A stretch of 60,002 nucleotides of DNA from Trichoplax adhaerens (lineage: Eukaryota; Animalia; Placozoa): assembly GCF_000150275.1 (NCBI RefSeq), contig NW_002060973.1:493956-553957 (forward strand), read 5' to 3'. The notes beneath the pieces are model-generated. The model saw only the letters and a program-made list of their open reading frames with translations, was not told where the DNA came from and made no database searches. The position numbers were made by a program, and so were the translations under genes. Positions 29,800 through 60,002 of the stretch are shown one piece after another (position 1 is the first letter of the stretch; each line of letters starts with the position of its first letter).

Positions 29800-30634
29800 G
29801 TAAATCTCGGCATATTTTGGGAAGTAAATACCGAATATCAACCATTCCAACTATTCCTTAACGTTCATTATTTCGATAATATCGCATCACGAATGATAAT
29901 AATGTTTTTTATAATTCTAATGCTTACAGCCGTCTGTACTTACTTTGAGTGGTTAGTCAGCATAAAATATCGGCTACTGATATCTGTATGGCTTATTTAG
30001 TATGATTGTGTTTCAATGTCAGTCGTGACAGCCACATTGTGCTTTACTTCACATTGCGAATACACTTAAACACAACTCACATTACTATTGCAATAATCTA
30101 TGTAATGGAGTGAAGCTTACAAGAAACTGTAGTTCTTTTGTAATTTTGAGAAGACACTTTATCACACCATAATAAATAAATATGCATTATACGTACATTT
30201 TATTCTAGATAATATATGTACTTTGTACGAAATTTAACCTAATAAAGCTTTACCTGCTATTCTAATCTGACGTTTTTTATATTTAGTTTGCTTCGCTACT
30301 ATTAATAACGAATACTAAATGCCTTTTACTGAGTAACTATCTAAAATTGCTTAACTACCGTTCCTGCAAGCGCAGCAACTACTATGATAGCTTCAATCAC
30401 AATTCCTGCAACGCTTTCGGAACTCATCTCACCACAGAGACAAATCCTTTCATAAAAGCTTTGATATCGTTTAAAACCTCCATTTACTTAAAACAGTATA
30501 CAAATTTGTTTCATACTTAGGCATACAACAAAGCAATATCCCAGTGATAATGAAAAAGTACAAGTACATACCGTACGCGAAATATAATGAGCATGGATTC
30601 TAATAGTAGTATAATAAAATGATCAGTATGTAGT

Positions 30635-31010
30635 TGTCACAAACCAGCCTTATGATAAGGTTTACGCAAATAAATCCCTAAGTTTTAAAAATTTCGGGAT
30701 TCAATTTCCCTGGAAAACTCATGAAAACTTCGACGCCTTGCTTCTATGTTACAAAACTAGAACTTATTTTATTTAGTGATCTGCCGAGCTTAAATACCTT
30801 TCGGCATAGTATTAGCCATAGTTACAGTTGCAAGAGCTCTTGCACGATATCCATCCATTCAGTAAGGATTGTACTACAGTAAAGCCTATGTTTTACCGTA
30901 ATACACTTTAACTTAAGTGATTTTTACTCAAAGTAGCTAATTGTAATTACCATATATAAATTTTAATTCGCAAAATATAGTCATTTAATTCTCCAGTTCG
31001 TACCGTGATA
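30635..31010 (-). mobile_element. Solo-LTR-like element, family C (diverged, intergenic)
   Basis: TGTCACAAACCAGC...TACCGTGATA, flanks gtagt/gtcgt. Confidence 0.8.
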
Positions 31011-32861: not shown

Positions 32862-32925
32862 ATGAAACTTCTTAATACGTTAATCTGGCTAATCATTTTC
32901 TCAAGCTGCAAGCTACAAGTTTTAG
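32862..32925 (+). CDS. First coding exon of paralog 2 (signal peptide)
   Basis: caaaATG context; MKLLNTLIWLIIFSSCKLQVL (basic N-terminus plus hydrophobic core) followed by a G|gtaag phase-1 donor that matches the phase of the LRRNT exon. Confidence 0.8.
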
Positions 32926-35900
32926 GTAAGAACTTTTTAGGCTCAATATTTCCATTCATAATCAAGCTCAAAATAAGTGCTGCAGTGACTGCAATGGAGG
33001 GTTCGATGCGTCGGATGATGCGTGTTTAGTCACCATACAGAGTATTGTACAAGGAGTTTAAGATAAGAGACTACTTTATTGTAAAGATAGAAATTAAGGT
33101 ACAGTGTGAGAGCTAGCGTAGATCAACATACAAGCTGTCGTGAAGCAGCGCGTAAAATACTAAGGCACAAATAGTTCTAGGGTAGAAAATGCCAGCATTT
33201 ATATCTATTGAGTTAGAGTACTTGCATAGAACAGGATTGTAGAACTAGATATAAGAAATTCCATAACAGGTTACAGAATAGCGGATGATCGTAGAAAATT
33301 GTGAGGACTGTAATCGCCAAATGCAACAAGCTATATTTGAATGTAGAGCAAACAGTTTGTGAATTTGTCTATATTTAAGAGCAAAACAAAATATCTATAT
33401 TTAAGGGTAGCTTACAGTTACAGTACAATCCCAAATACACTACATTGACAGAAAAGCGAAAAATTTTCTCATTCTAGTCTTCGAAATATAAAGTATCGAT
33501 ACCAAATTACAGAGCAAAGCTGCAGATTAGGTCCGACCATATTTTGCTTTCATATATAAAATTTATCGTTGTAGAATTAAATACATCATAGATTATTGGC
33601 ACGTATAATTCAGATTATCTTACTTTATGTTTTTTAAATGAAATGTAGATAAAATACGAGCACTATAGTATATTTACCAGATTGTCAAAATTTCGATATA
33701 AATATCTGAAAGATTAAATTGCTTACCAGCGCAACAGAGATGCCAACAAACGGTATCTTCAATGCCATCATTTCGTTAGTTTTGTGTCATTATTTCTCTA
33801 CCTTTATAATATCCAATGTATCATAGAAGGCATACTTATCTTAGCCGCTATAAAAAAGTTCAGACCACATTTCAAGACCTATGTTCTATAATTTATTAAA
33901 TAAGATAAAGTAATCGAAATAAATGTATACGAAAGTTTGCAGTAATTCGAAATTGTGCTAATCATATTAATTTTAGTATACAAGTCAGTATAAATGCAAC
34001 CTTCACTTCTACCCTATATTATTATATTAAGTAGATTTTGTATTCTCTTAAGTTCAGAATCCGCTGACTCAAAATTTGAGTTATTAAATTTGAGCAAATT
34101 TCAAACCGACACAAAATAGATCAGCATCGCGTGTAGCTTAGAAGTATCGTCTATTACTTTTCCACCGATCAGGGAAGAATTCTCTTTGTTTCTTTATAAG
34201 AACATAAAAACAGCTAAGATACATTAAATATCAATTTATAGGCTTTTTGTAAACAATTCCATATAACTATCCAAATCATATTCAAGATTTCCTTTACAGT
34301 ATTCTGATAATAAAGACAAAATTAGTATGTAGTTCAAAAAAGTAATTTTATACGGCTGGCAGCTACAACTTATTACAGACATAGTAACAGCTTAAATACT
34401 CTATTACAATTTACCAGTGATTATCTTGTCACGAAAGTAATCTTCATGACGTGTACTTTATTTCTATGTTACGTTTTATATATGTTTATATCTCAGAAAT
34501 ATTTTACGGTCTCCTTAGTTGCAACTTTAGTAGTTAACAGTTGATATCCTTAATTTAGAATTAGATAAATTAAATTAGCCATTGCCAACCAGTTAAGCCT
34601 TATTGTATCTATCATCTCCAAGGTTGTTAAGGTTCAAAGTATAATTCCCAAGTTTAGGGGAAATGTCTTATTATGATAGCTTAATATGTATCTATCACTA
34701 GTTAGCCTTCGAGAGCTGACCAAAACTATATTATCCACTCCAACTTGATCTCAGTTTCAATCTCAAAGTGCTGCAGTAGTAGAAACTAACTTATTCCAAT
34801 ATCCACCGCTAGTAAGAGATAAACAATAGCGTTTACAGTTAAGGCCTTTGTTAAACCAGAAAATAGGAATAGCACAGTATTTCTAACTACAACTTAAAGG
34901 AGACTTTCTTTTAAGTAAGATATCTAGCCCTTTATATAGTTTTATGACTTTACGCCGTACATACAGGTGCTAAGGCTAGTTTATATCCAATGTAATATAA
35001 TTACTATAATCTTATAAATCTTACAACATTAATACTAACAGCGCATTAAGATGTTATTTTACCGTAGTAAAGCTCGTTAATTAATCGTATTTATCACATC
35101 AGCTACTTATTACTTCTCCAAGGTGGCACAAATAAATATTTGGCCTCCGCCATCTTAGTTATTGCTAACATGCTATATGCATGCTCTAGTTATCGATTAA
35201 CCATTTATAATTTTCTTAGCTTAGCATATTATCAGTCTAACAATGACGTAAGTGTCACAAAACAGCTTTGCAAGAAGATAACCTAACATACGATCAATAA
35301 GTCAATCCCTTGAACTATGTGTTAAGGAATAATATCTGTACTATTAGAAAACTTTCGCTCTACTAGCAGACTACACAAAGACTTAGATGCATCGTATTTT
35401 ACGTTAAACACCAAGTTTAAAAATTAATTTTATAATACGATACATTGCGTTTATATACTCTCCCTCAATAATTTACGAGTCATGGTTAGTACGATTAACT
35501 TTGGAATCATTCACTGAATTAGACATTAATTTTAGCTATTGCTCGAAAATAACAGTATTTACGAACATAGAAATCTGATGACTAAACACAGAATAGTCTG
35601 ACTACGATATGTCCTATCGCGAGACATTTCCACGATAATTTACAATCTACCATAAGTAAGTTACAATCACAATGATTCGAACTGTAAGTAAATAACTCGC
35701 ATTCCATAATATAACTATTAATTTCAGTATATGTATATATGCTACTGTCATATAAAGCCAGTGCTACATTAAAATACCGTATATCCAAATTAGAAGTTAA
35801 CTAAATAAGGATAAGCTAACAAAATTATCTTAACATATATATTTCTACTCTAATAAGTATCTAACACTGTCACAGTAAGACGTCATTATTATTCCCAATT

Positions 35901-38900
35901 ATCACAACACTTGGAGCGAGCTCCGTAAACAGTATCTGTTAAACTATTATTAAGTATTGATTATTATTATAATACCGATACAGTAAATTTAAAAGGATTA
36001 GATTGTATCTAATCTGTACTGATAGAATCTCTTTAGAGTATTAATTTGGTTAACTTCTAATAGATGAGATGACTTCAGTACTTAAACCTGTTGTAGTTAG
36101 CGAAACCTATATAAGCGGTGGGTTTACCGATACTATATTAGATTAATATTTTTGAACAGGTTTCGAAGGTCTCGCTGAGTTAAACTCTATCTGCTTTGGA
36201 GTACCAATTGATTGGTATTTCAAATAAGAGTAGTGTAGGATAGAAATTACTCTCTCAATCCTTTTTGTAAGTCAGGGCTATTTCTAGCTCGTAACGTATC
36301 TTTAACTACTTTATTAATCATTTCAAGCTAATCAACACCTAACAATAAAGCTTGCTTTAAATTTCTGTATTTTGAATCCGCATTGTAATCATAATTAGCC
36401 AAAATTGCCATTAATACAACAATTTATAAAGCGACCAACACTGACTAAATATTTTGCTATTATTTGTCTGTGAATTTTCAATCTACTATATTCGTAAGAG
36501 ACTGACTGTGTATTTGAATGTACTTTTATATCATTTGATAGCAGATAACTTTGAAAATAACCAATATTTTACATACATTGAAGGCATTCTTAAATTTACA
36601 TATATAATATATATAAATAAATGTATATTTTATGCCGTAAATTTGCAGCAGTTTCACCATGTCCTCAAAGTTGTTCCTGTCCGATTGACTCTGTCATAAA
36701 TTGCCAAAATCCGCTCATGACCACCTTCCCAATCCTAACAAAAGTTATGGATAAAGTAACTACTTTGTAAGTATGTTGTATATGGTTTACACAGCCGAAT
36801 ATTCATGTATTTTGCATTAAATTTTACCCATATTGAACCATATAGTGCTTTTCAAATTTGTATAACGTAAATTTTAATAGTGTTACGCTATTTTTATTAA
36901 TCTCAACTCTCTCAATGCTACTTGAAATAGAGATATCACTGGTACAAGTATTCAACATATACCTAGACACGGCTTGTCTAATTATCCAAATTTGACTTCC
37001 CTGTAAGCTAAACGGAAGTTTATATAATCGCTCCTCAAAGAAAATCTTTTGCAAAGATAATGATTTTAACGATATACAAAAAATAGTTACCTTATCCATT
37101 AATTTTACTAGCAATAAAAATAGCATATGTCACAGGATTAAAAGTGAAATTTATTGACTTGAGCAGGTATTTATTTAAAAACAAAATAAAAAATGTCGAA
37201 GAAGGAACATTTTCAAACTTACATAAATTGCAATATCTGTAAGTGATTGTCAATCCAAATTATACAAATATTGTTAGCCCTAGAATCCATTAATTGAAAA
37301 TAAAGTTCGTTTCTTATAGTAATGATAGCTCCTTTATTTCACTTATTAAAAGTGCCATTGGAAATGTCAGATTAAACAATTACATTCATTTGATTTAAAT
37401 TCTTTGTATAGATCCTTGTCTGAAAATCAGTTGAAAATCTTGAATTCTTCTAGAATATTTGATGGATTACTAAATTTGGAATACCTGTAAGCTGTATAAA
37501 AGTTTAACACTTAGTACGGTAGATCTATATAATTTACTATCAGCATACTTTCCTAATACATAGCTACTGTAATTAGCTAAAATCATTATAAACCTATGAA
37601 ATTTAAAACTTCAAATTCTAGTTATAACGCAGGTAATATAATAAAGCATTATTACATTACTATTTAAAAGAATGCACGTAGTATTTAGGATCTCTAAGTA
37701 AGTAAACTCTATGCCGCTACTTTAAATATATACTATCCATACTTTAATGTATATTAATGATTGATGAAAAATGTAACCTATTGTCTTTTAAGCAAGATTT
37801 ATTAATAATTTAAATTCGTAAAGACACGATGCCACGTCCTAAACTTATTTTACTTTGTCTAGGAATCATAGAAATACGTAAAAATAGTGTATTGCGTATT
37901 ACAAATAGAAAGCGTATTTTAACTTTTAACTTATTTATTTCATTAAATTAGGTACTTGCAAAACAATCAAATAGATAGGATTACCAATGGAACATTCCTA
38001 AACTTGAATAAGTTAAGATTTCTGTAAGTTTCGTTATAAATATAATGACGAGATGATCAGGATTAACGGAATATAAATATTGCTGTGCTTTCTACGCTAC
38101 GTTTATGTAAGATAAATTAAAAGTTACTGAAATAGCTTAAGAAGGTTTACTAGATAGCAGATACTGTAAGATACAGTAAAAATTCTAAGAATATTTAAAA
38201 CTTTCGTATTTTTTTAGGAATTACTATATCTCTATAGTATGTTAACTCTCTTATTTTAACAGTAAAAAAATTAGCTATGGAAATCGGTTTCATCCGCTCT
38301 TCAAGAGCCGTAATAATCAATTAAATTGTTATCAATATCTGATGCAGGCTTTTGAATGGGAATCTATTAAATTCTTTGAGTTCTTCAATATTTGAAGGAT
38401 TAAAAAGCCTGAAATCTTTGTAAGTAAAAAATGTAAATTACTTATATTTAAAATAAATCATTCCATTTTGATTTATTAAATCAGTATTAATTCATATTTC
38501 TTAAACATTTCAATACTGGCTACATGACATTTGAAATAAAAGTAATTATAGAATACAGCATATGTGACAGAAAGAATACATGCAAAAGATAGTCTGTTAT
38601 TTAGCTATGAATATTCAATGTAAAGCGTCTAATACATCAGTATCGCTAACGTATACTTTTCAAAATATTGAAATTTTGAGAATCCTTACCCTTAAAAACT
38701 AATATTGAAAGAGGTTTCATCTTAATGGATTTAGGTACTTGCATTCCAATAGAATTGAAGCAATTAAAGATGGGGCTTTTGAAAGTTTGAACATGTTATC
38801 TAATCTGTGAGATTTCAACTCGAATAATAAGCATAAAACTCTTTTATATTTTATCTATCCAGTTTAAGAAGAATTTACCGAGCATGCCTAAAATTTCATA

Positions 38901-41900
38901 ATTTCAAATTAGGCCATTTCAACATTCTATTCGAGCTGTTGGAAAACTAAGCATTTTCATTTTGATAATCTATATATAGCGATTTATCAGATAACATATT
39001 ACCTGCTTTAAATTCTTCAAGACTGTTTGAGGGATTGGAAAAACTGAAATATTTGTAAGCTACTTAAACTGTAAGACCGATAACAATAATTTATTGGAAA
39101 TCGTTTGTAGCTTCCATAATCTAACTTGCAAGCGTAATATCCATCTTTGTCATTGTTCATAACTCTGCAAAATGGCGAGTATATTCAAGCTTATTAAAGA
39201 CATTGAAGTTTTTTAATTAAACTTAAAAAATTAGCTATTAACATACTGTAGATCGACAACACTTAGCTAAACGTAAAATACTGAATTTAAAGCACAATTA
39301 TCTATCAATTCTTAGCCAAGCGTCAACAATTATAAAATAATAAGTAATTAGACTTAGAATCCATACAATACATACAAGAAAGCACCTTAAAACTTATTTT
39401 AGGAATTTATTTGTGTTATTAGGTATATCTATAATAACAGGATTGAAAAGATCGCAAACGAGCCCTTTGCACAATTAAATAATTTGATAAGGCTGTAAGT
39501 AATTTTGTGATGCAACCACTATCTAATTATTTGCGAATTAAAATTGGAAGCAATTTTCCTATCTAAGAATTTAATTTCAGCCATTTCTAAAACGTAACGG
39601 TACTTACATTATATAAAATCAACCTTAGATCCATCGTATGCTTTTCATAGTCTTTTATTATTATCCATTGTAGAGACCTAAATGGGAATTTATTGAACAC
39701 TATTCATCCTGGAATATTTAAAGGGCTACAAAGATTGATTCACCTGTAAGCTAAATGAAATTTTGAATATTGAAATGTACTAACAGACGTTAAAAATTAT
39801 TAAGGAGCACAATAATGTCTATTCAGTTAGACTGCTAAGAAATAACTTTTCATTAATGTATGCGTATTGCTGTAATGAATTGGTTTTAATCCATTAAGTT
39901 TATTATCCACCAACTCGAAATTTGATTATAAAAAGTGGGCAGATCTCTAAGATAACACAATTAGGTCAATACTGCATTTAGCCAAAAAGTTTCGTTTATC
40001 AATACGTAGCACGCTTATCAGAGAAAAATTTACTTCTCCTGCTCTCATTAGAATAGTTTTCATTAGCAAAAGATAAACTGGAAAATATTGTAGCTGCAAT
40101 ACGGCACATTTTATAGATTAACCGCAAAATAGATATTCTACGATTGGAGGTTTAACGTAATAGAATAATCTAAGTCACATAGTGAAAGCTTACTTAAAAT
40201 TACTGTAGGATATTAATTATACATTGCTACTGAATTAGCTCAATTATTGGAATTGCTAACATGATGTTTGAGATGATGAAATATAGAAGAGTTCATCTCA
40301 CAGCTATTTATTGTAGAAGAAAATCCTAAACACATTTTCAGACGATGTGAACATAAATGAATGAAATCGATATCTTACGTAAAAGAAAATTGATTAAGAA
40401 TTGAGAGGTTGTCGTTATGAATTTAGGTACATATACCAAAATAAAATTGTAAGTATCGAAAAAAGAACATTCGCTGGCCTGTATAAATTGACTCACCTGT
40501 AAGATGTCTTCTTATATGATTGATTTCCGGCATTTTCTATTTTAAATTTATTAAGCAATCTTTCTTCGTGCAATAATATTGCAACGGTTATAATTTCTAA
40601 ACCAGACTTATCTCCTATCTTATATGAGTTTATACCACATTTGCCTGCAATGTTCTCATAAATACATGATATAGGTCATTGCAAGGAAATCTTTTGCGAG
40701 GTTTGAATTCTCCTGGAATATTTGAAGGGATTAGAAGATTACGTCACCTGTAAGCTACGTATAAGTATACTGTAATTACATACCTATGTGAATGGCACAT
40801 TACAAACTACTGGTATCCATTACAGGAAATAAATTAAAAAAATATTAATTCTGTAATTTTTATAATTATATATCGCTAAAACAATTTTTTTAAGAGTTAT
40901 GTTGTTTACCGTACAGATAATCGATCATTTTGTAAAATGGCTTATTATCGCATTTCACTTATAAATAATCAATTACACAATAACTATTTTTGTCTCATTT
41001 TACCTATAAAATAATTAATAAATAAATTTATTTAGATATTTAGGAAACAATAAGATAGAAAAAATAGTAGACGGAGCATTCGCAGATCTTTACTGGTTAA
41101 TGACACTGTGAGTAATCACATTGTTTGATACATTTAAATAGCTATTAGATATATGCAGAGTAAAGCTCTTGCGTCATTGTATATGCCAAGATAGATTAGG
41201 AACAATTTTATATAGCAAATTTTTTTTCCTGAGGTAGACAACCTAAATAATATTGTAATATTCTTTATTGTTAATGAATTACTCAGTGATTTGAAGGACA
41301 ATTTATTGAAAGCCTTAAACTCCCATAAAATACTGCAAGGATTATATAACTTAAAGTACCTGTAAGTTTAATCTGTTACCATGGGTAAAAAGTAAGGAAT
41401 ATGAGATACTGCAGTAATCAGTAGCAATTTAATTAATTATTTGCTCGCAATTTCGTACAGTACATTCTGCGAGTTATACATGAAGACTGCTGTTGTGCTT
41501 TTAGCCTTCTAGTTAACTAAATATACGGTAGATAATTTCGTAATTACGTAAAAAAGCAATGCTATGATAAAGATTTTACTAAGTAATAGGATTGGTTTTA
41601 TTAATTATAGATACCTAGACAGAAATCAAATAGAAAGAATTACAGATAAAGTTTTTGCCAATTCTAGATTTCTCTATAAATTGTAAGGTGTAATGAATTG
41701 ACTATAAGACACACTGCTAAAAAATACTGCTACCAATATAAATTTGAAAACTTATTTCATTTTGCACCTTATGTAAATTCTCGGCATAACTATTTAAATT
41801 ATCGTGCGATGATAATTGGAGCAGAAGCTTTGATAGCAACCTGCTGCTTGCTCTGACTTCTCCAGGAGTATTCCAAGGATTAACAAATTTGCAACAATTG

Positions 41901-44900
41901 TAAGTCATATTTAAATCATTTCCTAGAATAAATAGCTGCAAGTTGTAGCTCTGAAAGCTTCCAATTATCAATGTTTACTTTAATAAGTAATTTTAGTTCA
42001 ACTACTTTAATTCGTACTATATGTTTGAAAATTTCGAAGAGCGAGTGCTCACGCTAATTAGCAATACATTTTATACGGTACGGACTGGATACTAAATAGA
42101 AATCTATGATTTACTTTATTATATAGTACTTCAGGTATTATCAATAATAAATGAAATTACTGTGTCTCGATAAGTTTCCATTGAGTTTAATCATCTTCGC
42201 TCAGGATCTCATATTTCATCGCAGCATTACAAGCTTACAATAGTATCATTACTCTAGAGTAATTCTTATTTCTTAGGCTACATACTTCTTAATGTAACTG
42301 CGATAAAGTGTTTTCAAATATCAAACCGAAAACTAGTATTTCTTATAGAATTCACTTTATTACGCAAAATCTTATTTGCCCAGTAATACCAAGGACTATT
42401 GTCACGGTACAAACTACCGAGAAGAATTGAATGACTAAATTAAGTACATGTACATTTATATATGGTGATTACAATTAGTTACTTGCAGTGAGAATTACTG
42501 AAGCTATAATGTGGCACATTAAATTATGTATTACTGCAAATAAAATTCTTATCTAGTAATAGAATACAGATCAAGCCCTTGTAATTGAAATTTTGACAAT
42601 AAGTAGATTGTAGATGTATTGAAAGACTCTGTAATCCGATTAGGTAAAATCAGTTAGTACATGTCATTTTCGATAATAATAATTATTGGTACAAGATGTT
42701 TCATCAATGTTAGCAACGACCGAAAGGTATTTAAGCCCGGCGGATGATTGAACAAAATCAGTTCTCTAGTTTTGTGATGTAAAAGCAAAGGCATCTAAGT
42801 CGTTGTTAGTATTTAAGGGACGCTGAATCACGAAAAGATTCGAAATTTAGAGATTCGTTTTTCGTAAGGCTTGCCGCAAAGCTAATTTGTGACAAATATC
42901 CATCTTTAATCATTTATTTACAAATTATGCTTGTGTATGTATAACACTTGCATAACATACTTGATGTTAATAAAACGATGGGAATTTTAAGGCAGATGAG
43001 TATTGACTACCAGAAGTAAGAGAAAGTATATCATTCTTAATCTTACTTAAATTTCTATTGTAATTTGGTTAACCCCTACTACAACGTTTCGTTGAGAGCC
43101 ATATCATAATCATTAGCTGCGAATTATAATGTAGCATTAACAATATTTAAGTAGATGATGCAGATTGGTACTGCATTCCGAATGTGAGATTGATCATAAC
43201 TGTTTAAGGAAATACTAAATAGAGACGATAATAGATATCTGGTCACACTAAAGGATGAATTTAATCTTATAAATTGTATGAAAATCAGCATTAAAATCTA
43301 AAAGGTAATGTCTGAACAATGTTTTATGGACATACGTATGCTGGTATTATAGGTATTTGAATGGAAATAAAATATCCCGAATAGCGGATGGAGTTTTTGC
43401 ACCATTTCGTAATTTAATCCAGCTGTAAGTTGCAGTACATTGATAATCAAAATCAGCTAAAATGGCTAGATTACCTACTAATCCTTACCCTAACCCTATT
43501 TCTAATAACAATATATTACTCCTTTCTAATTAATCGTTGATTAAGTGCTCCTTGAATCACTAGGATAATTTCAGAACGTTTTATAAACCAAACGTATTGT
43601 TAATATCTGCTTTCTCGTTACTATTCGATAATATAGAGGTTACCCTATTTTACTGAACTTAAATTTATTTTCACTTTTCAAGTTTCTGTTCTATAGCATC
43701 AATCAGAAGTAATTAATTTTAGTTACGAATTTCTTACCGATTTTCAGGATGCTTAAGGAAAGTTCATAAACACACTCATAATTTATCGAAAACGATGCTT
43801 TGAACCTTCACTATTGCACTTTTAAATACTGTTTTAAACCTGTAGTAGATTTATAAAAATTGCAGTAAGTAACATTCAATAATCTGAATGAAAGTAATGC
43901 CGATGTTTAGTCTCTGCTCTTCGGTTTATACAACGAAAAGTTACTCTAGAATTTGAATTATCTCACCTCACCAGTTTACCTTTCATAGAAAGTCTGTAGT
44001 AGCCCTAAAATGTTGATTTTTATGTATTACTTGTTAGAATGATTACTTCGTATAATATATGGAATATGTAATAGAAATGAAATTATGATTGAATTTAGAA
44101 ATTACTTTAAAGATAAGAAGTGCAGAAAGGAATTTATCATTTTTATGACTAATTAATCTTATAATTTTTCATGCAATGCAATATAATTATTACTAGTCGA
44201 TTGACAAATAACGGGATACAGAACTTGCAAAATATAAGCTTTAGGGGCTTAATTAAACTGAGAACCTTGTAAGTCACTAAAAAGCGATCAATGCTATCTC
44301 CTGATATTAATAGATTCAGGTTTTTTGTTAGACTGTAATATTTGCGTCAGAAATTTCTAAGGAATTTGAATTGTTAGATATATAGAACGGAACAGAATTA
44401 CGGATATACCGGCTGAAATACTAAAGAATATGCCTGAATTGATTAATTTGTAAAGTATTTCAGAGTTCATCAAAATGATTACGCGTACCAGTAATTACGT
44501 TACGACCTCCATCAACTTAACTAATAGTGTTCTAGCATCTTTATAAATGCTTAATTTAGCAATCTATTTAGATATTTAAATATTCCAATATTGAGTTAAT
44601 GAATACTTTTTTGATTTATACAAATAAAATAATAGCTATGCAGGCACAAATTTGATTACTAAAATAAGCCACAAGTCTTGGGAAGGCACAACTAAAATAA
44701 AGATTATGTAAGACAAGATATTTCAACACTTTTAATATAAGAGTAGATTGCGTTGTAATCTTTCTGCTTTATGCATAGGTGGTATCAGCTATGTATTTGA
44801 AAGTAATTACTATGATAACTAACAATACGTGCACGATTTATTTTCTCGTTTCTGGAATAAACCTAGATAAAATATCAGTCGCTATTATGGACGTAATCCA

Positions 44901-50900: not shown

Positions 50901-53900
50901 AATATATAGTAAGGTTAGAATACCTTTTCTTTCATTTAATTGCTTTCTCACCAGAGATATCAATAACAATTATTTGACTTTCCTCAATCTATCAACATTC
51001 AGTGGGCTTTCCAGGTTAAACTATTTGTAAGTATGAGATAAATTTGTTAAATGGATTTTTTTGTTATAATTTTTTCCAGCATGGTTGAGATATGCTGAAG
51101 ATTCAAATGATTTGCAAGCGACACATGACAAGAAAAACAATTACTATTAATATATTTGATATTGTTTACTTACACGCACAACAGACTCCTGGATGAAAAT
51201 CAGCTGACAACCATCCAAGATTTTCAGTTTTCTAAGCTACCCAAACTGCAATTCCTGTTAGTGATCAAATTTTTGACGCATGAATTGAAAGTAAAGAGCA
51301 ATACAGAAATAACTGAATTACATCTGCGCTTATTTGATTAAATTTAGATACTTAAGGTCAAATAAAATAAAGCAGGTACAAACGAAAGCCTTTGTCGGAC
51401 TAGAAAACATAAAACAAGTGTAAGTACGTAGATTAATTATAAATTGACTTTTAATTGGATACGATATCCTGCTGCGTAATAAATTAGACAGAGTTATATT
51501 AGAAAATTCTAATACGAAGCTTTATAGAGCAAAATTTTAACCCAGTAATCACATTTCTTCAATACTAACCTGCCAATGTATTTTTAAAACAACGCATCTA
51601 ATATATCGCAATACAATTCGTAGCTGGCTAGATGGGAATCTCTTTTACCATTTAAAAGATTTACCTTTAAACCCTTTCAATAATCTACAATACATGTAAG
51701 ATTGAAGATAAGCTAAATTTCTCTAGCTAGTTTTTCGTCAGTTTATACTGTGCATCTGCAAAATTTAACGTAGTTCTAATACTTGAAAACTCATCAGCGG
51801 CTTATCTAGAAACAAAATTCGAAAGATTGATATGGTTTGTTCAAGCAAGAATAAATACAAAGCTAGCAAAATGTAAGCCAATAGCAAGCATGAAATAATT
51901 TTTGACATTGTATATATATAACATATATAATACTGAAAATTTTCGTACGCTCACTTATAAATGGTTTTGGACATGCTTGTTAACACGTATTCTAGTAAAT
52001 AACATAATTCAGACTTTAGCATTTTATAGATTTGAAAGGGTATTCTAGTATCAAATTTCATTAGTTATTAAAGAGACCATTCTGTAATAAACAGGATGAT
52101 TGATGCCTGTGATGCAGGTAGCCTTGTTTTAACACTGTACATTAAAATGGTATTTAGGCTATTTATTATGATTCCAATTTAATGTTTTTTCCCCTTATTT
52201 CTTAAATTAGAGATTTATCGAGCAACCTTATGAGTGAAATTAAAATTTCTGGATGTTTTTCTTGTTTAAAGCAAATGTAAATTATATTTGAAGTCAATTT
52301 CACTTATTCTACTGTTCGAAAACAATTCTTAAGCAATATTTTTGTTAAATTTTGTTCCTAGGATATCAGTGTTACCGCTACATCTAATTTTATCATTTAA
52401 TCAGTCAACATATTAAAAGTTGTTCATTAAATCTTTGCTTTGCGTTTCAGAAATATCTCCAGCAACAGATTTACAAATGATAGAAGCCTGTCACTTCGCA
52501 ACGTTTCCTGTATTACATCCTTGTAAGTAAATTCTCTAACGATGAAGCTAAAGCCCATTTTGCTAGTAACATCCGCTCGTCATTTGCTCTATTGCGTTCT
52601 CTTCTAAATGTTAATCTTGCCGAAGTTGATTGGATAAGGAAGCATTTAAACGATCAAATTATTTTATTTATTATAATTAAATAGTTTAGGCCGCATAAAT
52701 TGCCAGTATTAATGATTAATGTTATCTTATTATGGTCTTGCGAATTTGACCTTAAAGTTAGTTGTTTGGGTATTTTTTAGAGATATTAGCCAAAACAGAA
52801 TTTCTAGCCTATCATCTGATATTTTCTCCACTTTTCAAGATCCAATACTTATTTCTACATTGTACGCATACTTATACACAAATTAGCGTAGTAAAATTGT
52901 CATATTAGTACGGATGAAAATGCTAAAAACTTAATTAAGTTAATTTTATTTTCTAAAATTAGGAATATATCTGGTAACCGTCTTGAGTATATAAGATCTA
53001 CTACATTTTATCCAACTTTAGGATTGGAAAAGCTGTAAGAGCTCATAACATAGACGTTTTTAGTTACTGTTAAATCAATCTTTGGTGATAGAACTTGAAT
53101 AATACTTTACAATTACATATAATCAGCTATGCAGTTTTCGAAGAAAATTATTATGGAATTAATTAATTATTACAACGTTATAATGAGCAATTTTTTTGAT
53201 AGCGTCATAATAAGCTACTAAAGGTATGATATTAAATATTACTACTTACTATTTCATTCATTGATATTGTAATATAAATTAAAATAACATCTTTGCATTG
53301 CCTAAAATGGTTTAAAAACGGCTTCTATAATTTAAAATTTAGAGATTGCGGTATTAGTGTAAAGGTTAGCGTCACGAAAGTAATTTTCGTGACGTATACT
53401 TTATTTCTATGTTACGCTCTATATATGTTTATTCTCAGAAATACTTTACGGTCTCTTTAATTATAATTTAGTAGTTGACAGTTGATATCCTTGATAGGAT
53501 TAGATAGACTAAAATAGTAATTGCCAGCTCTTAAACTGGATTGCATCTATCACCTCCACGGTTGCTAAAATTAAAAGTATAATTCCTAAGTTTAGAGGAA
53601 ATGTCTTAGTAGGGTAGCTTAATATGTACCTGTTAAACTATTATTAAATATTAATTATTTTATTACTGATACAGTAAATTTAATAGGATTAGATTGTATC
53701 TAATCTGTAATGATAGAATCTCTTTAGAGTATTAATTTGGTTAATTTCTAATAGACGAGGTGACTTGCGCAGTTAAACCTATCGTAGGTACCAAAATCTA
53801 TATAAGCGATGGGTTAGCCGATAGTAAATTAGATTGTGAAAGTACTATAGTAAATTTTGAAGGTCTCGCTCAGTTGAATTCTATCTGGTTTGGAATACCA

Positions 53901-56900
53901 ATTGACTGGTATTCCAAATAACAGTAGTATAGGATAGAAATTACTCTCTCAATTCTAGTTGCAAGTTAGAGCTATTCCTAGCTGGTAACAGGTAGACTTA
54001 CGAGATAAAAAAATTCAACTTGCAATAATCTGAAATCTCTTTAACCTAAGTTTTTACATTAAAAATTGTTATTTGTAGCAAACCTTGTAAATTGCAGGAA
54101 CAATGACTTTAAATAATATTATAATCTTTGCTTATATGTTCTCAGACACATTGAAAATAATCGCCTTGATAAGCTGGACTTTCTTCATCCTCTACAAAAA
54201 TTAAAAATTCTGTAAGGACTGATATAAGTTTGACGAAGAATTGATGACGAGAGTATAAGTTCTCTATTGTATAAGATATTAGTCAATTTTTATCATGAAA
54301 TACATATTTTTAAACGTTGTCAAAACCAGCTTCGTGACAAAAATAACGTAAAAAATCGCTGAATTACTATAGTCTTCGGGATTCAGTATCCCTTAACTAT
54401 CTCAGAAGCATTTAGACGCCTTTGCTTCTACGTTAAACAGCTATAGAACTCTTCTTTTATTCAACTATCTGCAGAGCATAAATACCCTTCGACAGCTGCT
54501 ATCATGTATGAGTCATAAAAGTTCATAAAATTTAGTTCATGGTCGATAGCTATATTAATACAGACATTATTCATAATCTTAGACATGTTCTGAACGATTC
54601 TTGATAATAAGATTACAGTATGTTCGTACACAGAATTATTTATAGTATCATCTATAATTAAATATCTTCAGAATGTTCATCACCAGTGTTACAAGACATT
54701 ACAGTATGATCATTTATCATTAGTTGCCGAATAAGAACTCTTACTACATGTCACAAACTTATGTTGCGAACTACTACACTAAACTAATAGATTACTTTTG
54801 CCTTGCTCCACTACACCTGGAGATCTACTGTATGGTAGTTCTTTACTACTTTCGGTCACACAGGGATAAGACTGTTCTAAAAGATTAGTATAGTTTTTAT
54901 TAGTAGAGTTGCCGAGTACCTTCTCGTACACGATCTAATAAGGAACTCAGGAACTGAGCATTCGCTCGTCCTTTTATACCATTCCACTAAATTTATGGTG
55001 CACACATAGTAACTTGACAATATAAGATTTACATGATTTGTATACACGATAATCGCACGATAAGTGCGCGATAGTCACACGATAAATGTGCGATAATCGC
55101 ACGATAAATGCGCGATAATCGCACGATAAATGCGCGATAATCGCACGATAAATGCATGATAATCGCGCGTACGTAGCGGGTGCTAACGTATCGCCATTAT
55201 TAATATCTACTGTATATAGGCTCTACTAATTAATTGCAAATACAATTATGCCTTTTGTCGTCTAGCAATCTAGACATTAATATCTTAATTTCAATTATGC
55301 TTACCAATATGATCCATTAGCTAAATACTGACAAAATCTATTTAATTAGCAAGTACGGTGCTTTGCTCTGTAACACTAGAGTACAGCATAATTTACTGTA
55401 ACAAATAATAACTACCAAAGTTCTTACTGTAAATCATTATTAGTTATCTCCATATATAAATGTTAACAACTAAATTTAGTGATTTACTTTTCACGGTGGT
55501 TCGTATCGTGACAAACGTATCTACTAGTATTATCAAATTTTCGAAATAATTTGTGTCTATATTTTGGTAGAAAGATAAGATTTATTTAAACGGACAATTG
55601 GAGCTAGTAATATAGCTATATTGATTTATTTTCGAAATTTACTAAATATTCACTTCTTGGATTTTCATTTCGCTAGCCTAGCCTTTAAAAATCGAATAAG
55701 TGAACTGAAGAGTAGCTACTTCCAAAATTTAACCAATCTAATGCAATTGTAAGAGATAAGTAAATAATTCAATAGAATATTTTTTTCGGAGGCCTTTTTA
55801 CTATCATGAAATTAGTACAAGATCAGCCGCGAATAATGTAGGATTATTTATAAATAAAATAGATGCCGAATTAATTTCAAATTCTATTAAATGCTCCTAG
55901 AGATATCAGTTTTAACGAAATAAAATCTCTTGAAAATGGCATATTTAAAGGGTGTCAAGATATTGCAATCATGTAGGTTTCCATACGAGACTCAATTGAC
56001 TTGACTATCAGTCTTAAATAAAAAATCAATCCCCCTTTTCATGAATCGCAGAAAGATTTCCTATAGTTCTCTTATTAAATGATCATTAATATGTAATCCG
56101 CGGATATTTAGGAATCTGAATCATAATAAAATTTCTAGCATTGAAAAGAAAACTTTCCAAGGTTTATCGAAGTTATCTTCGCTGTATGTACTGAATTATT
56201 TTACCAGCTGTTACCAATGCGTATAAAATATTTTTACAATCTTGAAAACTAGCAAGCATTGTAACTGGCACTTTGATTTATTAGAGACCTCAGCTATAAT
56301 CGAATAACATCTTTGAAAGGAATATTTCATCCAGATTTAATTGAGTTAAATTCGTTGTAAGTAATCATTTCTTTATGAATTGGAGCTTCCTAGTACGGTT
56401 ACTCTCTATCCTATTCGTGGACAATTTTAGTTTGAGATTTTATTTGCTATAAGCTAAATCTTCTTTTAAGAAGTGCTTATTTTTAGGATAAATATTACAA
56501 TTCGACTTTTAAGTTTTACTCATTGGCCTCGAATCTTCTAATTTAAAGCGTTTTTTATATTCACACATGCGAAGAAAATGCGATGGAAATTTAATCTCTT
56601 CTTTAGCTGGATCACCGTTTTATAATTTAACTAAACTTGCTCATCTGTATGTTATTATTTAAAGGCTGCGCCAACTATCATATTATTAAATATAGTAGAA
56701 GGAATTAATATTTGCTAATCTAGAATGCATTTGAGTAACGAATTAATCATTCTGATGATAATATTTTGTCCTAGATCTCTTAATCACAATCAAATAGTAA
56801 AAATTAGCAACGGCAGCTTCACGAACTTAATTAGCATACGTAAACTGTAAGTCATTATTTCATTATGTGCGAATATAAGAATGCTAGCTGTGATTAGTAT

Positions 56901-59900
56901 ATATTATTATCTGAAGCAATAGTTGCAATTTTCTTCAAGTATACTATTTAAAATTTTTTTTCTACTTCTCAGATCGATTAATTATAACAAAATTTCTGTC
57001 TTGTCGTGCAATTCAATTTACAAAACCATTCAAGAATTGTAAGTTATATTAGAATGATATCGATAGCTGTAAGCCGATACTTTTGGAGATGAGATTTGCT
57101 AATTATTAATCAGTTTTGTTTGTTCACACTTAACGTGGTTATTTATGCAATGGATAGTTCTGAAGTGATTTTATCATTTTCTATGTCACTTAGGAGTGTA
57201 AACCATAATAATATATCCGGTTTCTCGCCAAGTTGTAGCGAAATTTTCTCCAGCATAAAAGACAGCTTGTAAGCAATTAGAATTTTATGTTTATTACTTG
57301 CCTTAAGCGCCGTTGTTATGAATTTTTTGATTCCACTTCTGTCTTCGTTCTTTCGATACAAAATTTGAAATAGTACTTTTCGTATATCAATTTAAAGGGA
57401 TATAAGCTATAATAATCTTGTATCGAATGGCATTAATATTTATAAGGAAGTTTTAATGAAATTGGCAAAGTTACCACCTACCCTGTAAGTATTTTAAAAC
57501 GTCTGAAAATAATACTATGAGTCTCGAAGATCCTTATTTAAAATACTGAGTATTTACGTAGCCTGTTGATTTGAAGCTATAAAGCTTGCATCTTAATTTT
57601 ACGTTGAATTCAATAACTAGACTATTAGCCGGCAACAATATTACGTCCATATCACCTTTATTTATGAAATGGAATATTTTCCTTAGAATATTGTAAGTGC
57701 TATCACTATTTCAGTATATTTACCTAACTTATATTTCTCATTAGTGTCAAATGCATACAAACTTAACGAGAAATATCCGCAGCTATGTATTTCAATGCCG
57801 CTGACAACCTTAAGCATTTCAGTATACTCACCATAACTAATACAATGTATCGCATTTACATTTAAATTTTTACTAACACATGAAGAAATATCGACAGATC
57901 TCTACTTCAATGCCTTTTACAATTCCTTCTTTAATTTGAAGATTAATAAGTAATTTAACACTCTATCGTTGGACTGGCTTCACCACTAATAAGAAAAACT
58001 TCCACATACATCAGATATGCAGTTACACTATCGAGTTGTAGTTCATACCTGGAACCACTAGCGCTCTACTAAAATGTACAAAATAGCTTTCGTTTGAGTG
58101 TAAATTACGTTATTCATTGAACAATAACCGATGAAGCTTCTAAAGCCGAATTACGGTGGTTTTTACGACTTGTCCAATCATAAATAATTATAATCAATGT
58201 AATCAAATATCTCTAAGCTATTGTAATAAAACATTGCATAAACGTAAATTATAATTAAATGTTCACATTTGGTAGTTTGACTGCGTTCCTTATTGGAACT
58301 TTGAAAAATATAAAACGACGGACTAACTAAACCGTTAACTTTAAGCTAGATTACTAGTTTATTAATAAATCCATAGGTCTATTGGCCACAACAACTTATC
58401 GCTATCTGCTATTAAAGAAATCATAAGAGGATTTTATATCACTAATTACTGTGTATCGCCAATTGGGCCTAATGACGATGCTAAGTGTTTTATTTACTCC
58501 ATGTAAGTCTAGAAGCTAAAATTTATTTTATCATAAATGTAGATATGTCAGTGAAGCAACGAAAACATTCCTATGTTTTATACTAACATAATTTTCTTGC
58601 TGCTTTTATTTTCTGGATTCATTTTATTTATTTGGCGCAGTGACTTGAGCTACAGCAAATTAACAGAAATCCCATCCAATATATTTGTTCATCTACGTGG
58701 ATTTTTAAGAGTCCTGTAAGTCGTTTCACATAATTGCTAGAGTTGACCAAACCCAAATTAAAATATTAATTATCCTACGAGGCGATTAATAGAAATAGAA
58801 CTATTCAGCTTTCTCGACTACTATTAATTAGCTCGCCTTGTTTAATTCCCAACATGTTTGAAGGCAGTGAATAAGCGCAGCTTTTCAAATTAAACTAAAT
58901 AATCGAGAAATGGATTATACGGTTGTAGTTCAGTTTTTTAAAATATTGTAAGAACTATCGTATTAAATATTACGGGATAGCAATGTACTGGATCGTTATC
59001 TTTATTTTTTCTTTCGATATCTTATAATAGGAATCTCAATAATAACGCCATAAAACATTTTGATGCCTCCGCTATATTTCGTGATAGTGAAAAGAACTTA
59101 CAAGAACTGTGAGTTAACTTTGAAACTGTTTAAATATTCATCTTTTAATGATTGTAACAAATTGGATAGAGTATAAAATTGTACTGAACTCTTGACTGAT
59201 GATGAGATAGTTTGAATACTGTATTACTATGTGTTTGAAACTGTTACTGAAAGGCCGAAGTTTTTCCCAAGATTTGCATTTTACCGATACTTTAAGATAA
59301 GGCGTTTAAATGTAGCTACATGTATGAATGGTCGATTTATGTGATAAGTTATGAACTTTAAAAGTAGTAGTAGGACTATCATAAAAATATCAATAATATT
59401 TTCAATATTTTCTTGCTTTCTTTCAATGCCATTTAATAGAAAAGAGTTTTTCAAATAATCAATTATTGAGTATCGCTTTCATTATGTGAAACGTATTTTT
59501 GTAATGTAGCAAAATGTACTTATATCAATGATATATTACATTAATAAAAACTTCTGCAGACATTTGGCTCATAATGCAATAGCCGAAGTAACTAATCCTA
59601 ATAACGTCCAATTTAATGCACTGAAAATAATGTATGTATAAAATTCGTCTTTAATTATACATGAAGATGCGAAAGTATATTTCTTACACGTTCAGTATTA
59701 TGCGGAATTTACGTAGGAACTTGAATCAGAACACACTCTCCAACATTTGCGGAAGGTCAAACGTACTCGGAATTGCTCCTAACTTACAGAAATTGTTAAG
59801 TTTGACTTTGAATAAAGTGATATTTTCTGCATTTTTTATTATTCTTCAAGTTTAACTTACTACTATATGAAATGTAAATTTTAGATATTTGGATTTCAAC

Positions 59901-59956
59901 AAAATAAGAATTTTGAAAAGTAGATGTTTCAGGACACTTTTCAAATTACAACTACT
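32862..59956 (+). CDS. Giant LRR-containing GPCR, paralog 2; spliced, last LRR and 7TM exon expected beyond the window end
   Basis: Exons 32862-32925 (signal peptide), 36649-36766 (LRRNT), then 58 LRR exons: 37167-37238,37412-37486,37952-38023,38348-38419,38735-38806,38980-39054,39423-39494,39674-39745,40427-40498,40675-40749,41036-41107,41287-41361,41611-41682,41825-41899,43353-43424,44197-44268,44378-44449,44636-44707,45624-45695,45797-45868,46012-46083,46209-46280,47742-47813,47927-47998,48089-48160,48273-48344,48463-48534,48745-48822,49067-49138,49257-49328,49502-49573,50377-50448,50955-51026,51185-51256,51348-51419,51624-51695,51798-51872,52211-52276,52451-52522,52781-52861,52963-53034,54146-54211,55677-55748,55901-55972,56112-56183,56285-56356,56575-56646,56775-56846,56973-57038,57194-57268,57398-57484,57621-57692,58377-58502,58641-58715,59031-59108,59560-59631,59717-59794,59885-59956. 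From 41036 on, exons match paralog 1 one-to-one. The GPCR call rests on that paralogy. Confidence 0.9.
34693..35931 (-). mobile_element. Solo-LTR-like element F (about 612 bp net), nested in E
   Basis: TATCAC...GTAAACA with perfect TSD gtatc/gtatc; absent from the uninterrupted E copy. Confidence 0.82.
35253..35874 (-). mobile_element. Solo-LTR-like element, family A, nested inside element F
   Basis: TGTCACA...TGTCACA with perfect TSD gtaag/gtaag. Confidence 0.9.
36649..36766 (+). CDS. LRR N-terminal cap (LRRNT) exon of paralog 2
   Basis: (A)VSPCPQSCSCPIDSVINCQNPLMTTFPILTKVMDKVTTL: CPxxCxC..C LRRNT signature; tttgcag acceptor, gtaagt donor. Confidence 0.9.
42400..42894 (+). mobile_element. 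Solo-LTR-like element, family C (diverged)
   Basis: TGTCACGGTAC...TTTGTGACA, flanks actat/aatat; TATTTAAG at about 42728. Confidence 0.82.
46456..47034 (-). mobile_element. Probable solo-LTR-like element (single copy)
   Basis: TGTCATAAAC...CGTGACT, flanks ctact/ttact. Confidence 0.5.
47104..47454 (+). mobile_element. Probable solo-LTR-like element related to D
   Basis: TATTACGGT...TTTGTGACA, flanks tgtat/tatat; GTATAAAAGGAGCGAG resembles the TATA region of D. Confidence 0.55.
49637..50205 (+). mobile_element. Solo-LTR-like element, family A (internal deletion)
   Basis: TGTTACA...TGTAACA with perfect TSD gtatg/gtatg; TATATAAA near 50021. Confidence 0.88.
53370..53990 (-). mobile_element. 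Solo-LTR-like element, family E (uninterrupted)
   Basis: CGTCACGAAA...GGTAACA, flanks gttag/ggtag. Confidence 0.85.
54749..55375 (-). mobile_element. Solo-LTR-like element D, nested in C, carrying a minisatellite
   Basis: TGTCACA...TGTAACA, flanks ctaca/ctaga; TATAAAAG on the minus strand near 54975. Confidence 0.82.
55045..55169. repeat. Minisatellite: 22-bp unit CGATAATCGCACGATAAATGCG (two 11-bp subunits), about 5.5 copies
   Basis: Directly visible tandem repeat. Confidence 0.95.
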
Positions 59957-60002
59957 GTAAGTATTTCATTTCTTAGAAAAATTAGCAAGAATAAATAAAT
60001 TG

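What the first reader, a model, noticed from the sequence alone, without database searches (positions are those of the whole stretch)
32862..59956. Giant LGR-type GPCR with about 59 LRRs
Seen: signal peptide, LRRNT and 58 consecutive LRR exons; paralog 1 shows one further LRR, then hinge+7TM. Known: glycoprotein-hormone receptors and RXFP1/2 have about 10 LRRs, LGR4-6 about 17, and TLRs roughly 20-25. Inference: an ectodomain of about 1,500 aa cannot be a single horseshoe and would form a multi-turn or segmented solenoid. That is far more surface than a peptide hormone needs and suggests pattern recognition, adhesion or mechanosensing through a GPCR. The ORF track misses nearly all of it because the exons are about 72 nt.
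Basis: partly seen in the sequence, partly recalled or inferred. Interest (0 to 1): 0.85.

Follow-up and report, generated by a model that had tools for sequence, protein, structure and literature searches.

The report
Giant 60-repeat LRR receptor gene, Trichoplax
This is a real, at least partly transcribed gene of the placozoan Trichoplax adhaerens for a hormone-receptor-type GPCR whose outer part has about 60 leucine-rich repeats, one per tiny exon; it is the largest example I saw of a placozoan receptor expansion already described in 2022.

Summary
On the + strand of 32862-59956 lie a signal-peptide exon, an LRRNT exon and 59 LRR exons. All have AG/GT borders and phase 2-2, and 42 of them are exactly 72 nt. 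My exon scan found 54 on the + strand, 3 on the opposite strand and 1-2 in shuffles.

The contig ends at the window's end, but its last 5.3 kb overlaps the start of contig C1413. That contig supplies a 60th LRR exon and a terminal exon with a Cys hinge, a 7tm_1 domain and a tail. The 7TM matches RXFP1 and TSHR best. The model is about 2,116 aa.

Spliced RNA contigs give 12 GT..AG junctions at my predicted borders (exons 23-37), with no exon skipping. dN/dS against two tandem paralogues is 0.15-0.21.

The organism is Trichoplax adhaerens. A 2022 review already reports 41 placozoan-specific LGRs with unusually many LRRs (34 shown). Earlier notes of this scan report 48-50-LRR members elsewhere in this genome. 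I therefore file it as a new, extreme member of a known kind.

A full-length transcript, the fold and the ligand are unproven. The pattern-recognition or adhesion idea remains speculation.

The parts
32862..32925 (+). Exon 1: start codon and signal peptide (21 codons plus 1 nt, phase-1 donor GTAAGA)
   Evidence: Read directly. The hydrophobic core has the look of a signal peptide (by eye). The split codon with the next exon gives Ala. No RNA evidence was obtained here.
36649..36766 (+). Exon 2: LRRNT cysteine cap (CPxxCxC...C), 118 nt, converts phase 1 to phase 2
   Evidence: Pfam LRRNT PF01462, E 8e-6, 25.8 bits, equal to the gathering score. AG/GTAAGT borders. Paralogue 3 has the same cap exon at C1413:~15180.
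36931..37002 (+). LRR exon 1 (degenerate first repeat)
   Evidence: 72 nt, AG/GT, phase 2-2. Counterparts exist in the neighbouring genes at C1384:446195 and C1413:15476.
37167..43424 (+). LRR exons 2-16: two-repeat (A/B) super-repeat, about 7.5 copies. A exons are 72 nt; B exons are 75 nt (or 72).
   Evidence: Coordinates. Peptide identity is 0.41-0.45 at even lags and 0.24-0.27 at odd lags. Single exons hit Pfam LRR_8 at E 0.003. Paralogue 3 has about two A/B units fewer.
44197..51695 (+). LRR exons 17-37: regular 24-residue repeats (one 78-nt exon, no. 29)
   Evidence: Junctions 23>24, 24>25>26>27>28, 29>30>31 and 32>33>34>35>36>37 are seen in spliced contigs of RNA run X4, at the predicted borders for 10 of 12 and within 7 nt for the other two. 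Exons correspond one-to-one with paralogue 1 exons.
51798..59956 (+). LRR exons 38-59: irregular C-terminal third of the array. Lengths are 66-126 nt, several exons carry Cys, and exon 54 (58377-58502) encodes 42 residues with 2 Cys.
   Evidence: The exons are colinear with paralogue 1 (16671-26691) at 65-86% nucleotide identity, while introns align only where interspersed repeats lie. No RNA contig of X4 lay here.
54676..60002 (+). Stretch that overlaps the start of contig C1413, through which the gene continues
   Evidence: C1413:3-1744 equals window 54676-56439 (97.9% identity). C1413:3614-4346 equals window 59269-60002 (99.5%). An N run lies between them. Beyond the window lie LRR exon 60 at L009:4495-4566 and the terminal exon L009:5529-7275, with hinge, 7tm_1 (E 3.3e-24) and a tail of about 270 aa.

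Best explanation
This is one protein-coding gene of Trichoplax adhaerens. It encodes a receptor of about 2,116 aa: signal peptide, LRRNT cap, about 60 consecutive leucine-rich repeats with no internal caps, a short cysteine hinge (CC...C...SSCE), a rhodopsin-type 7TM domain of the LGR clade, and an Asn/Ser-rich tail of about 270 aa.

Each repeat is one exon flanked by phase-2 introns that split the first Leu codon. The gene sits in a tandem cluster of at least five such genes. Repeat number changes by gain or loss of two-exon A/B units.

Inferred mechanism: a large extracellular ligand or surface binds the LRR solenoid. The signal passes through the hinge, whose ...SSCENIL... segment aligns with the hinge end of TSHR and RXFP1. 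It then reaches a 7TM core that keeps DRY and NPxxY and couples to a G protein, as in other LGRs.

The ligand is unknown. Shown here: the exon structure, splicing of exons 23-37, family membership of the 7TM, and purifying selection. Inferred: a single full-length mRNA, the fold, the signalling and the ligand class.
For: - **Exon array:** 59 AG/GT, phase 2-2, stop-free LRR exons. The scan found 54 on the + strand, 3 on the - strand and 1-2 in shuffles.
- **Domains:** Pfam LRRNT and LRR_8 on single exons, and 7tm_1 on the terminal exon.
- **Completion of the gene:** the contig ends at the window's end, but C1413 overlaps it and carries LRR 60 and the hinge+7TM exon.
- **Closest solved structures:** RXFP1 1.3e-32, TSHR 1.7e-30, FSHR, LHCGR and LGR4 3e-14; non-LGR GPCRs score 5e-10 or weaker. 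DRY and NPxxY are visible in the ORF.
- **RNA:** 12 GT..AG joints between adjacent predicted exons. One 969-nt contig runs from 647 nt upstream of exon 24 into exon 28, crossing the 1,461-nt intron. No skipping joint was seen.
- **Selection:** dN/dS is 0.21 against paralogue 1 and 0.15 against paralogue 3 over 38-42 exon pairs.
- **Paralogues:** paralogue 3 (LRRNT, at least 53 LRR exons, 7TM) is complete on gap-free sequence.
- **Organism and family:** TRIADDRAFT and Trichoplax sp. H2 'GRL101-like/Relaxin receptor 2' names; PMC9545775.
Against: - No transcript was seen that joins the signal-peptide or LRRNT exons, exons 1-22 or exons 38-60 to the 7TM exon. Only one 5.9-kb stretch could be laid.
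- The 7TM exon is on another contig, and the link rests on a 5.3-kb overlap at 97.9-99.5% identity.
- All exons are symmetric, so skipping would stay in frame. A Trichoplax sp. H2 model of paralogue 1 (P0151) omits two of its LRR exons.
- No public protein model of this gene was found in the length range searched.
- The spliced protein could not be scanned or folded as a whole.
Confidence: 0.75

Rival explanations
1. The exons are real, but mature mRNAs regularly skip subsets of the symmetric one-repeat cassettes. The locus would then yield many shorter receptors (a combinatorial repertoire) rather than one 60-LRR protein.
For: All 59 exons are phase 2-2 with lengths divisible by 3, so any skip keeps the frame. 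The H2 model P0151 of paralogue 1 lacks exons 26287-26358 and 26461-26538. P0006 and P0007 look like exon-skipped versions of one another.
Against: All 12 RNA joints seen join neighbouring exons, and none skips one. Exon-for-exon conservation and dN/dS of about 0.2 across the array fit constitutive exons. Gene predictors often miss 72-nt exons, which can explain the shorter models.
Confidence: 0.1
2. The array belongs to two or more genes, for example a secreted or membrane LRR protein from the 32862 start plus a shorter LGR driven by an internal promoter.
For: RNA continuity was tested only for exons 23-37. Long introns (1.1-1.5 kb) after exons 15, 23, 42 and 43 could hide a boundary. The published maximum for this family is 34 LRRs.
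Against: No internal signal peptide, LRRNT/LRRCT cap, stop codon or frame break was found in 59 exons. The 1,461-nt intron 23>24 is spliced in RNA. The long introns are filled by interspersed repeats. Paralogues 1 and 3 keep the same exon order end to end.
Confidence: 0.08
3. It is a decaying duplicate (pseudogene) in a tandem cluster, or an assembly artefact that inflates the exon count.
For: The gene lies at a scaffold end with redundant assembly. No public gene model was found.
Against: There are no stops or frame breaks. dN/dS is 0.15-0.21. Spliced RNA exists. DNA contigs of run X1 are colinear with the assembly over 47600-53279. The A/B units share at most 58% peptide identity, so they are not collapsed or duplicated haplotypes.
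Confidence: 0.03

Closest known systems
Placozoan-specific LGRs of Trichoplax adhaerens (Tadh-LGR6 to -46; example Tadh-LGR15 with 34 LRRs), review of 2022, PMC9545775
   Same: Same species. [quoted passage not shown]
   Different: About 60 LRRs here against 34 in the published example. The public NCBI models in this cluster are 7TM-only fragments of 337-370 aa. Whether this gene is one of the 46 could not be checked, because the paper lists TriadITZ identifiers only.
Relaxin-family receptors RXFP1/RXFP2 and GRL101-type (type C) LGRs
   Same: RXFP1 is the best solved-structure match of the hinge+7TM (E 1.3e-32). The CC...C...SSCE-type hinge end is shared. Sources name the Trichoplax sp. H2 relatives 'Relaxin receptor 2' and 'GRL101-like'.
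   Different: No LDLa module: Cys-rich fragments of intron 1 gave no Ldl_recept_a hit. About 60 LRRs rather than about 10.
Glycoprotein-hormone receptors (TSHR, FSHR, LHCGR; type A LGRs)
   Same: 7TM similarity of E 1e-26 to 1e-30. The hinge end aligns with the ...PCEDIMGY... segment of TSHR. One LRR per exon is also typical of these genes (my knowledge).
   Different: Those receptors have 9-11 LRRs and a long hinge. Here the hinge is about 35 residues and the array is six times longer.
Long LRR ectodomains outside GPCRs (Toll-like receptors with about 19-27 LRRs, Drosophila chaoptin with about 41; figures from memory)
   Same: Typical 24-residue extracellular LRRs with an Asn (or Cys) ladder. 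N or C stands at repeat position 6 in 55 of 59 exons.
   Different: The membrane part is a 7TM GPCR, not a single-pass TIR protein or GPI anchor. The array has no internal cap, and I recall no animal receptor with a longer one.

Membership tests
LGR (leucine-rich repeat-containing GPCR, rhodopsin delta group) | Rhodopsin-family 7TM whose nearest relatives are LGRs | tested here: met
   7tm_1 E 3.3e-24. PDB: RXFP1 1.3e-32, TSHR 1.7e-30, FSHR 5.6e-28, LHCGR 5.3e-26, LGR4 3.3e-14; non-LGR GPCRs 5e-10 or weaker.
LGR (leucine-rich repeat-containing GPCR, rhodopsin delta group) | N-terminal ectodomain of LRRs with an N-terminal Cys cap | tested here: met
   LRRNT E 8e-6. Eight single exons hit LRR_8 at E 3e-5 to 0.02. 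59+1 LRR exons.
LGR (leucine-rich repeat-containing GPCR, rhodopsin delta group) | Cys-rich hinge between the last LRR and TM1 | tested here: met
   The terminal exon starts with a CC...C...SSCE segment directly before TM1. It aligns with the hinge ends of RXFP1 and TSHR.
LGR (leucine-rich repeat-containing GPCR, rhodopsin delta group) | LRRs and 7TM on one mRNA | tested here: inconclusive
   For this gene, RNA shows exons 23-37 joined but not the link to the 7TM exon. For paralogue 1, the H2 model P0151 (99% identical) joins three LRR exons to the hinge+7TM exon.
Type C LGR (RXFP1/2, GRL101) | LDLa module(s) at the N-terminus | tested here: not met
   The signal-peptide exon is followed by the LRRNT exon. 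The two Cys-rich open fragments in intron 1 gave no Ldl_recept_a match.
Placozoan-specific LGR expansion (PMC9545775) | Trichoplax gene, non-A/B/C hinge, unusually many LRRs | tested here: met
   Organism, 60 LRRs, short hinge. About 55 loci in the genome match the 7TM at E<1e-40, in line with the 46 LGRs reported.
Placozoan-specific LGR expansion (PMC9545775) | Identity with one of the 46 listed models | not testable with these tools
   Supplementary Table 2 gives TriadITZ (CoGe) identifiers only.
Any LGR | Known ligand class and G-protein coupling | not testable with these tools
   Needs expression and deorphanisation.

The most novel reading that the evidence does not exclude
The gene makes a single receptor with about 60 uninterrupted LRRs. 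That would be the longest LRR ectodomain on any GPCR, forming a solenoid of more than two turns. Its repeat number is tuned by gain and loss of two-exon units. Together with its roughly 40 relatives, it would serve placozoans, which lack canonical Toll-like receptors (PMC6321704), as a GPCR-coupled sensor of microbial, food or cell-surface patterns rather than of a peptide hormone.
Probability: 0.12. Interest if true: 0.7.

Novelty: new member of a known kind. Interest (0 to 1): 0.35.

Why it matters
The result gives a nearly complete gene model for a locus where I found no public model. Public models of the neighbouring genes are only 7TM stubs. The model is about 2,116 aa in 63 exons.

It raises the known LRR count of placozoan LGRs from 34 (published) and 48-50 (earlier notes of this scan) to about 60. 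It also shows how the count changes, by gain or loss of two-exon A/B units.

It does not open a new class. The family and its oversized ectodomains are already in the literature. What these receptors bind remains the open question.

Tried and rejected
- **Plain regular-expression scans.** Searching for LxxLxLxxNxL in ORFs and in AG..GT 72-nt exons showed no strand bias, and I briefly doubted the finding. The motif's first Leu codon is split by every intron, so a profile built from homologues was needed.
- **LDLa module.** I looked in intron 1 and found none.
- **Sequence upstream of the window.** I wanted the start of paralogue 1, but C1384:454953-493955 reads N, as a gap or withheld sequence.
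- **The look-up of encoding contigs for TRIADDRAFT_33357.** Nothing on record.
- **Matching the gene to the 46 published LGRs.** The identifiers could not be mapped.
- **Concave-face hypervariability.** This would be a pattern-receptor signature. Mean identity to paralogue 1 is about 0.59 at concave positions and about 0.51 at convex or loop positions, so there is no such signal.
- For that reason no structure prediction of the ectodomain was made.
Full report
**What the window is.** The window is G000:C1384:493956-553957, the last 60 kb of a 553,957-nt contig in a 105.6-Mb assembly with 29% G+C. Protein hits name the organism: TRIADDRAFT models on contigs of exactly 553,957 and 9,739,543 nt, plus Trichoplax sp. 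H2 'GRL101-like' and 'Relaxin receptor 2'. It is therefore Trichoplax adhaerens.

**Checking the observation.** The only long ORF with a family match is 28184-29626 (+), which is 7tm_1 at E 2.7e-24. This is the end of an upstream paralogue, which I call paralogue 1.

My first motif scans for LRR exons showed no strand bias. A 24-residue LRR profile built from placozoan homologues (P0005, P0006, P0007, P0016) changed that. It gave 68 hits of 8 bits or more on the + strand and 4 on the - strand. The flanks explain the earlier failure. Each repeat is an exon of the form AG|N...NN|GT, and the intron splits the codon of the first Leu of LxL (CT|G, TT|A and so on).

An exon scan for this pattern found 54 exons in 36901-60002 on the + strand. 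It found 3 on the - strand and 1-2 in shuffled sequence. Five weaker or irregular exons were added from conservation with paralogue 1 and from an RNA junction. Three borders were corrected.

**Final model inside the window.**
- Signal-peptide exon: 32862-32925.
- LRRNT exon: 36649-36766 (Pfam LRRNT, E 8e-6).
- 59 LRR exons, with coordinates:
  - 1-10: 36931-37002; 37167-37238; 37412-37486; 37952-38023; 38348-38419; 38735-38806; 38980-39054; 39423-39494; 39674-39745; 40427-40498
  - 11-20: 40675-40749; 41036-41107; 41287-41361; 41611-41682; 41825-41899; 43353-43424; 44197-44268; 44378-44449; 44636-44707; 45624-45695
  - 21-30: 45797-45868; 46012-46083; 46209-46280; 47742-47813; 47927-47998; 48089-48160; 48273-48344; 48463-48534; 48745-48822; 49067-49138
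  - 31-40: 49257-49328; 49502-49573; 50377-50448; 50955-51026; 51185-51256; 51348-51419; 51624-51695; 51798-51872; 52211-52276; 52451-52522
  - 41-50: 52781-52861; 52963-53034; 54146-54211; 55677-55748; 55901-55972; 56112-56183; 56285-56356; 56575-56646; 56775-56846; 56973-57038
  - 51-59: 57194-57268; 57398-57484; 57621-57692; 58377-58502; 58641-58715; 59031-59108; 59560-59631; 59717-59794; 59885-59956

The LRR exons total 4,350 nt (1,450 codons) with no stop. The median intron is 174 nt, with a range of 85-1,465.

**Where the gene ends.** The contig stops at the window's end. The start of contig C1413 repeats the window's last 5.3 kb. C1413:3-1744 equals window 54676-56439 at 97.9% identity, and C1413:3614-4346 equals window 59269-60002 at 99.5%; an N run lies between them. 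Downstream of the overlap, C1413 (locus L009) carries one more 72-nt LRR exon (4495-4566). It then carries a terminal exon (5529-7275) with a short hinge (CC...C...SSCE), a 7tm_1 domain (E 3.3e-24) that keeps DRY and NPxxY, and a tail of about 270 aa. Summing exon lengths gives 6,348 coding nt, or about 2,116 aa, with an ectodomain of about 1,575 aa. The sum was made exon by exon.

**Is it transcribed and spliced as predicted?** One reads call was allowed, and I laid 47600-53500. Run X1 covers the introns, so it is DNA, and it is colinear with the assembly. Run X4 is an RNA-seq library and gave spliced contigs. One 969-nt contig covers exons 24-27 fully and enters exon 28. It extends 647 nt further upstream, and the last 30 of those letters are exactly the end of exon 23 (46251-46280), so the 1,461-nt intron is spliced out. 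Other contigs join 29>30>31 and 32>33>34>35>36>37. Ten of the twelve joints are GT..AG at exactly my borders. The other two, 35>36 and 36>37, lie within 7 nt of them, where mismatches made the alignment ambiguous. No joint skips an exon.

**Constraint and relatives.** Exons 12-59 correspond one-to-one and in order with paralogue 1 exons at window 1031-26691, at 57-86% nucleotide identity. Introns align only where interspersed repeats lie. dN/dS over 42 exon pairs is 0.21 (dS about 1.05). Against paralogue 3 it is 0.15. Paralogue 3 lies at C1413:15129-41633. It has an LRRNT exon, at least 53 LRR exons and a hinge+7TM exon on gap-free sequence. The giant layout is therefore a conserved property of this tandem cluster, whose 7TM exons lie at C1384:396.5k, 436.3k and 522.1k and at C1413:5.7k and 40.1k.

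Scaffold positions (3, 6, 8, 11, 16, 19, 22 of the exon frame) are conserved. Concave-face positions are not more variable than convex ones, which gives no sign of arms-race diversification.

Exons 2-16 form a two-repeat A/B super-repeat, with peptide identity of 0.41-0.45 at even lags and 0.24-0.27 at odd lags. Paralogue 3 has about two A/B units fewer. Repeat number therefore changes by two-exon units. Exons 1-37 are regular 24/25-residue repeats. Exons 38-59 are irregular (66-126 nt, several Cys). No internal LRRNT/LRRCT-like cap was seen, so I read the array as one solenoid with possible kinks, not a Slit-like string of domains. This is inference.

**Comparison with what is known.** The hinge+7TM is closest to RXFP1 (1.3e-32), then TSHR, FSHR, LHCGR and LGR4. 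There is no LDLa module, so it is not a type C LGR in the strict sense.

The 2022 review PMC9545775 re-annotated T. adhaerens and found 46 LGRs. [quoted passage not shown] Its identifiers cannot be mapped here. Earlier notes of this scan describe 48-50-LRR members on other pieces of this genome and reach the same placement. I found the paper independently beforehand.

PMC6321704 reports that placozoans lack canonical TLRs and couple C-type-lectin recognition to GPCRs.

**Verdict.** The gene is a new and extreme member of a published family. The function and the full-length transcript remain open.

Noticed in passing
window 54676-60002 and L009 (C1413:1-4346): The end of contig C1384 and the start of contig C1413 are the same locus assembled twice, at 97.9% and 99.5% identity with 26 gap positions. 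C1413 has an N run of 1,869 where the window has 2,829 bases. This is probably allelic redundancy, and it means the two scaffolds abut.
   Followed up: partly
window 1031-29626: Paralogue 1 has at least 48 LRR exons colinear with exons 12-59 of the finding, then LRR 26867-26938 and a hinge+7TM exon from about 28047. The Trichoplax sp. H2 model P0151 is 99% identical to it but omits exons 26287-26358 and 26461-26538. This is either a prediction gap or real exon skipping.
   Followed up: partly
C1384:454953-493955 (just upstream of the window): 39,003 bases read N, as a gap or withheld sequence. An LRRNT-less start of a giant LGR (LRR1 plus 12 A/B exons) lies at C1384:446195-453496. The 7TM-to-7TM spacing across the N run is 86 kb against 33-40 kb elsewhere, so a whole further gene may be hidden there.
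   Followed up: no
window 35251-35874; copies at 6242-6878, 7279-7911, 27294-27925(-), 9673-10284(-), 2529-3005, 49631-50210: An interspersed repeat of about 630 bp, at 73-86% identity and in both orientations, sits in introns of both paralogues. A second family lies at 42397-42900, 54316-54748, 55373-55514, 4559-5136, 23446-23886 and 30631-30992. These repeats fill most of the long introns.
   Followed up: no
window 50760-50877: Contigs of the DNA run X1 and of run X10 carry a 116-nt deletion relative to the assembly, in the intron between LRR exons 33 and 34. It is an indel polymorphism.
   Followed up: no
window 55045-55166: A 22-nt tandem repeat of 5.5 copies at 90% match lies in the long intron before exon 44.
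   Followed up: no
window 29020-29626 and L009:6500-7275: The cytoplasmic tails (about 200-270 aa) are Asn/Ser/Asp-rich. They do not align between paralogues beyond about 1,000 nt of the terminal exon. No kinase-like ORF follows, unlike the pseudokinase-tailed LGRs noted elsewhere in this genome.
   Followed up: partly
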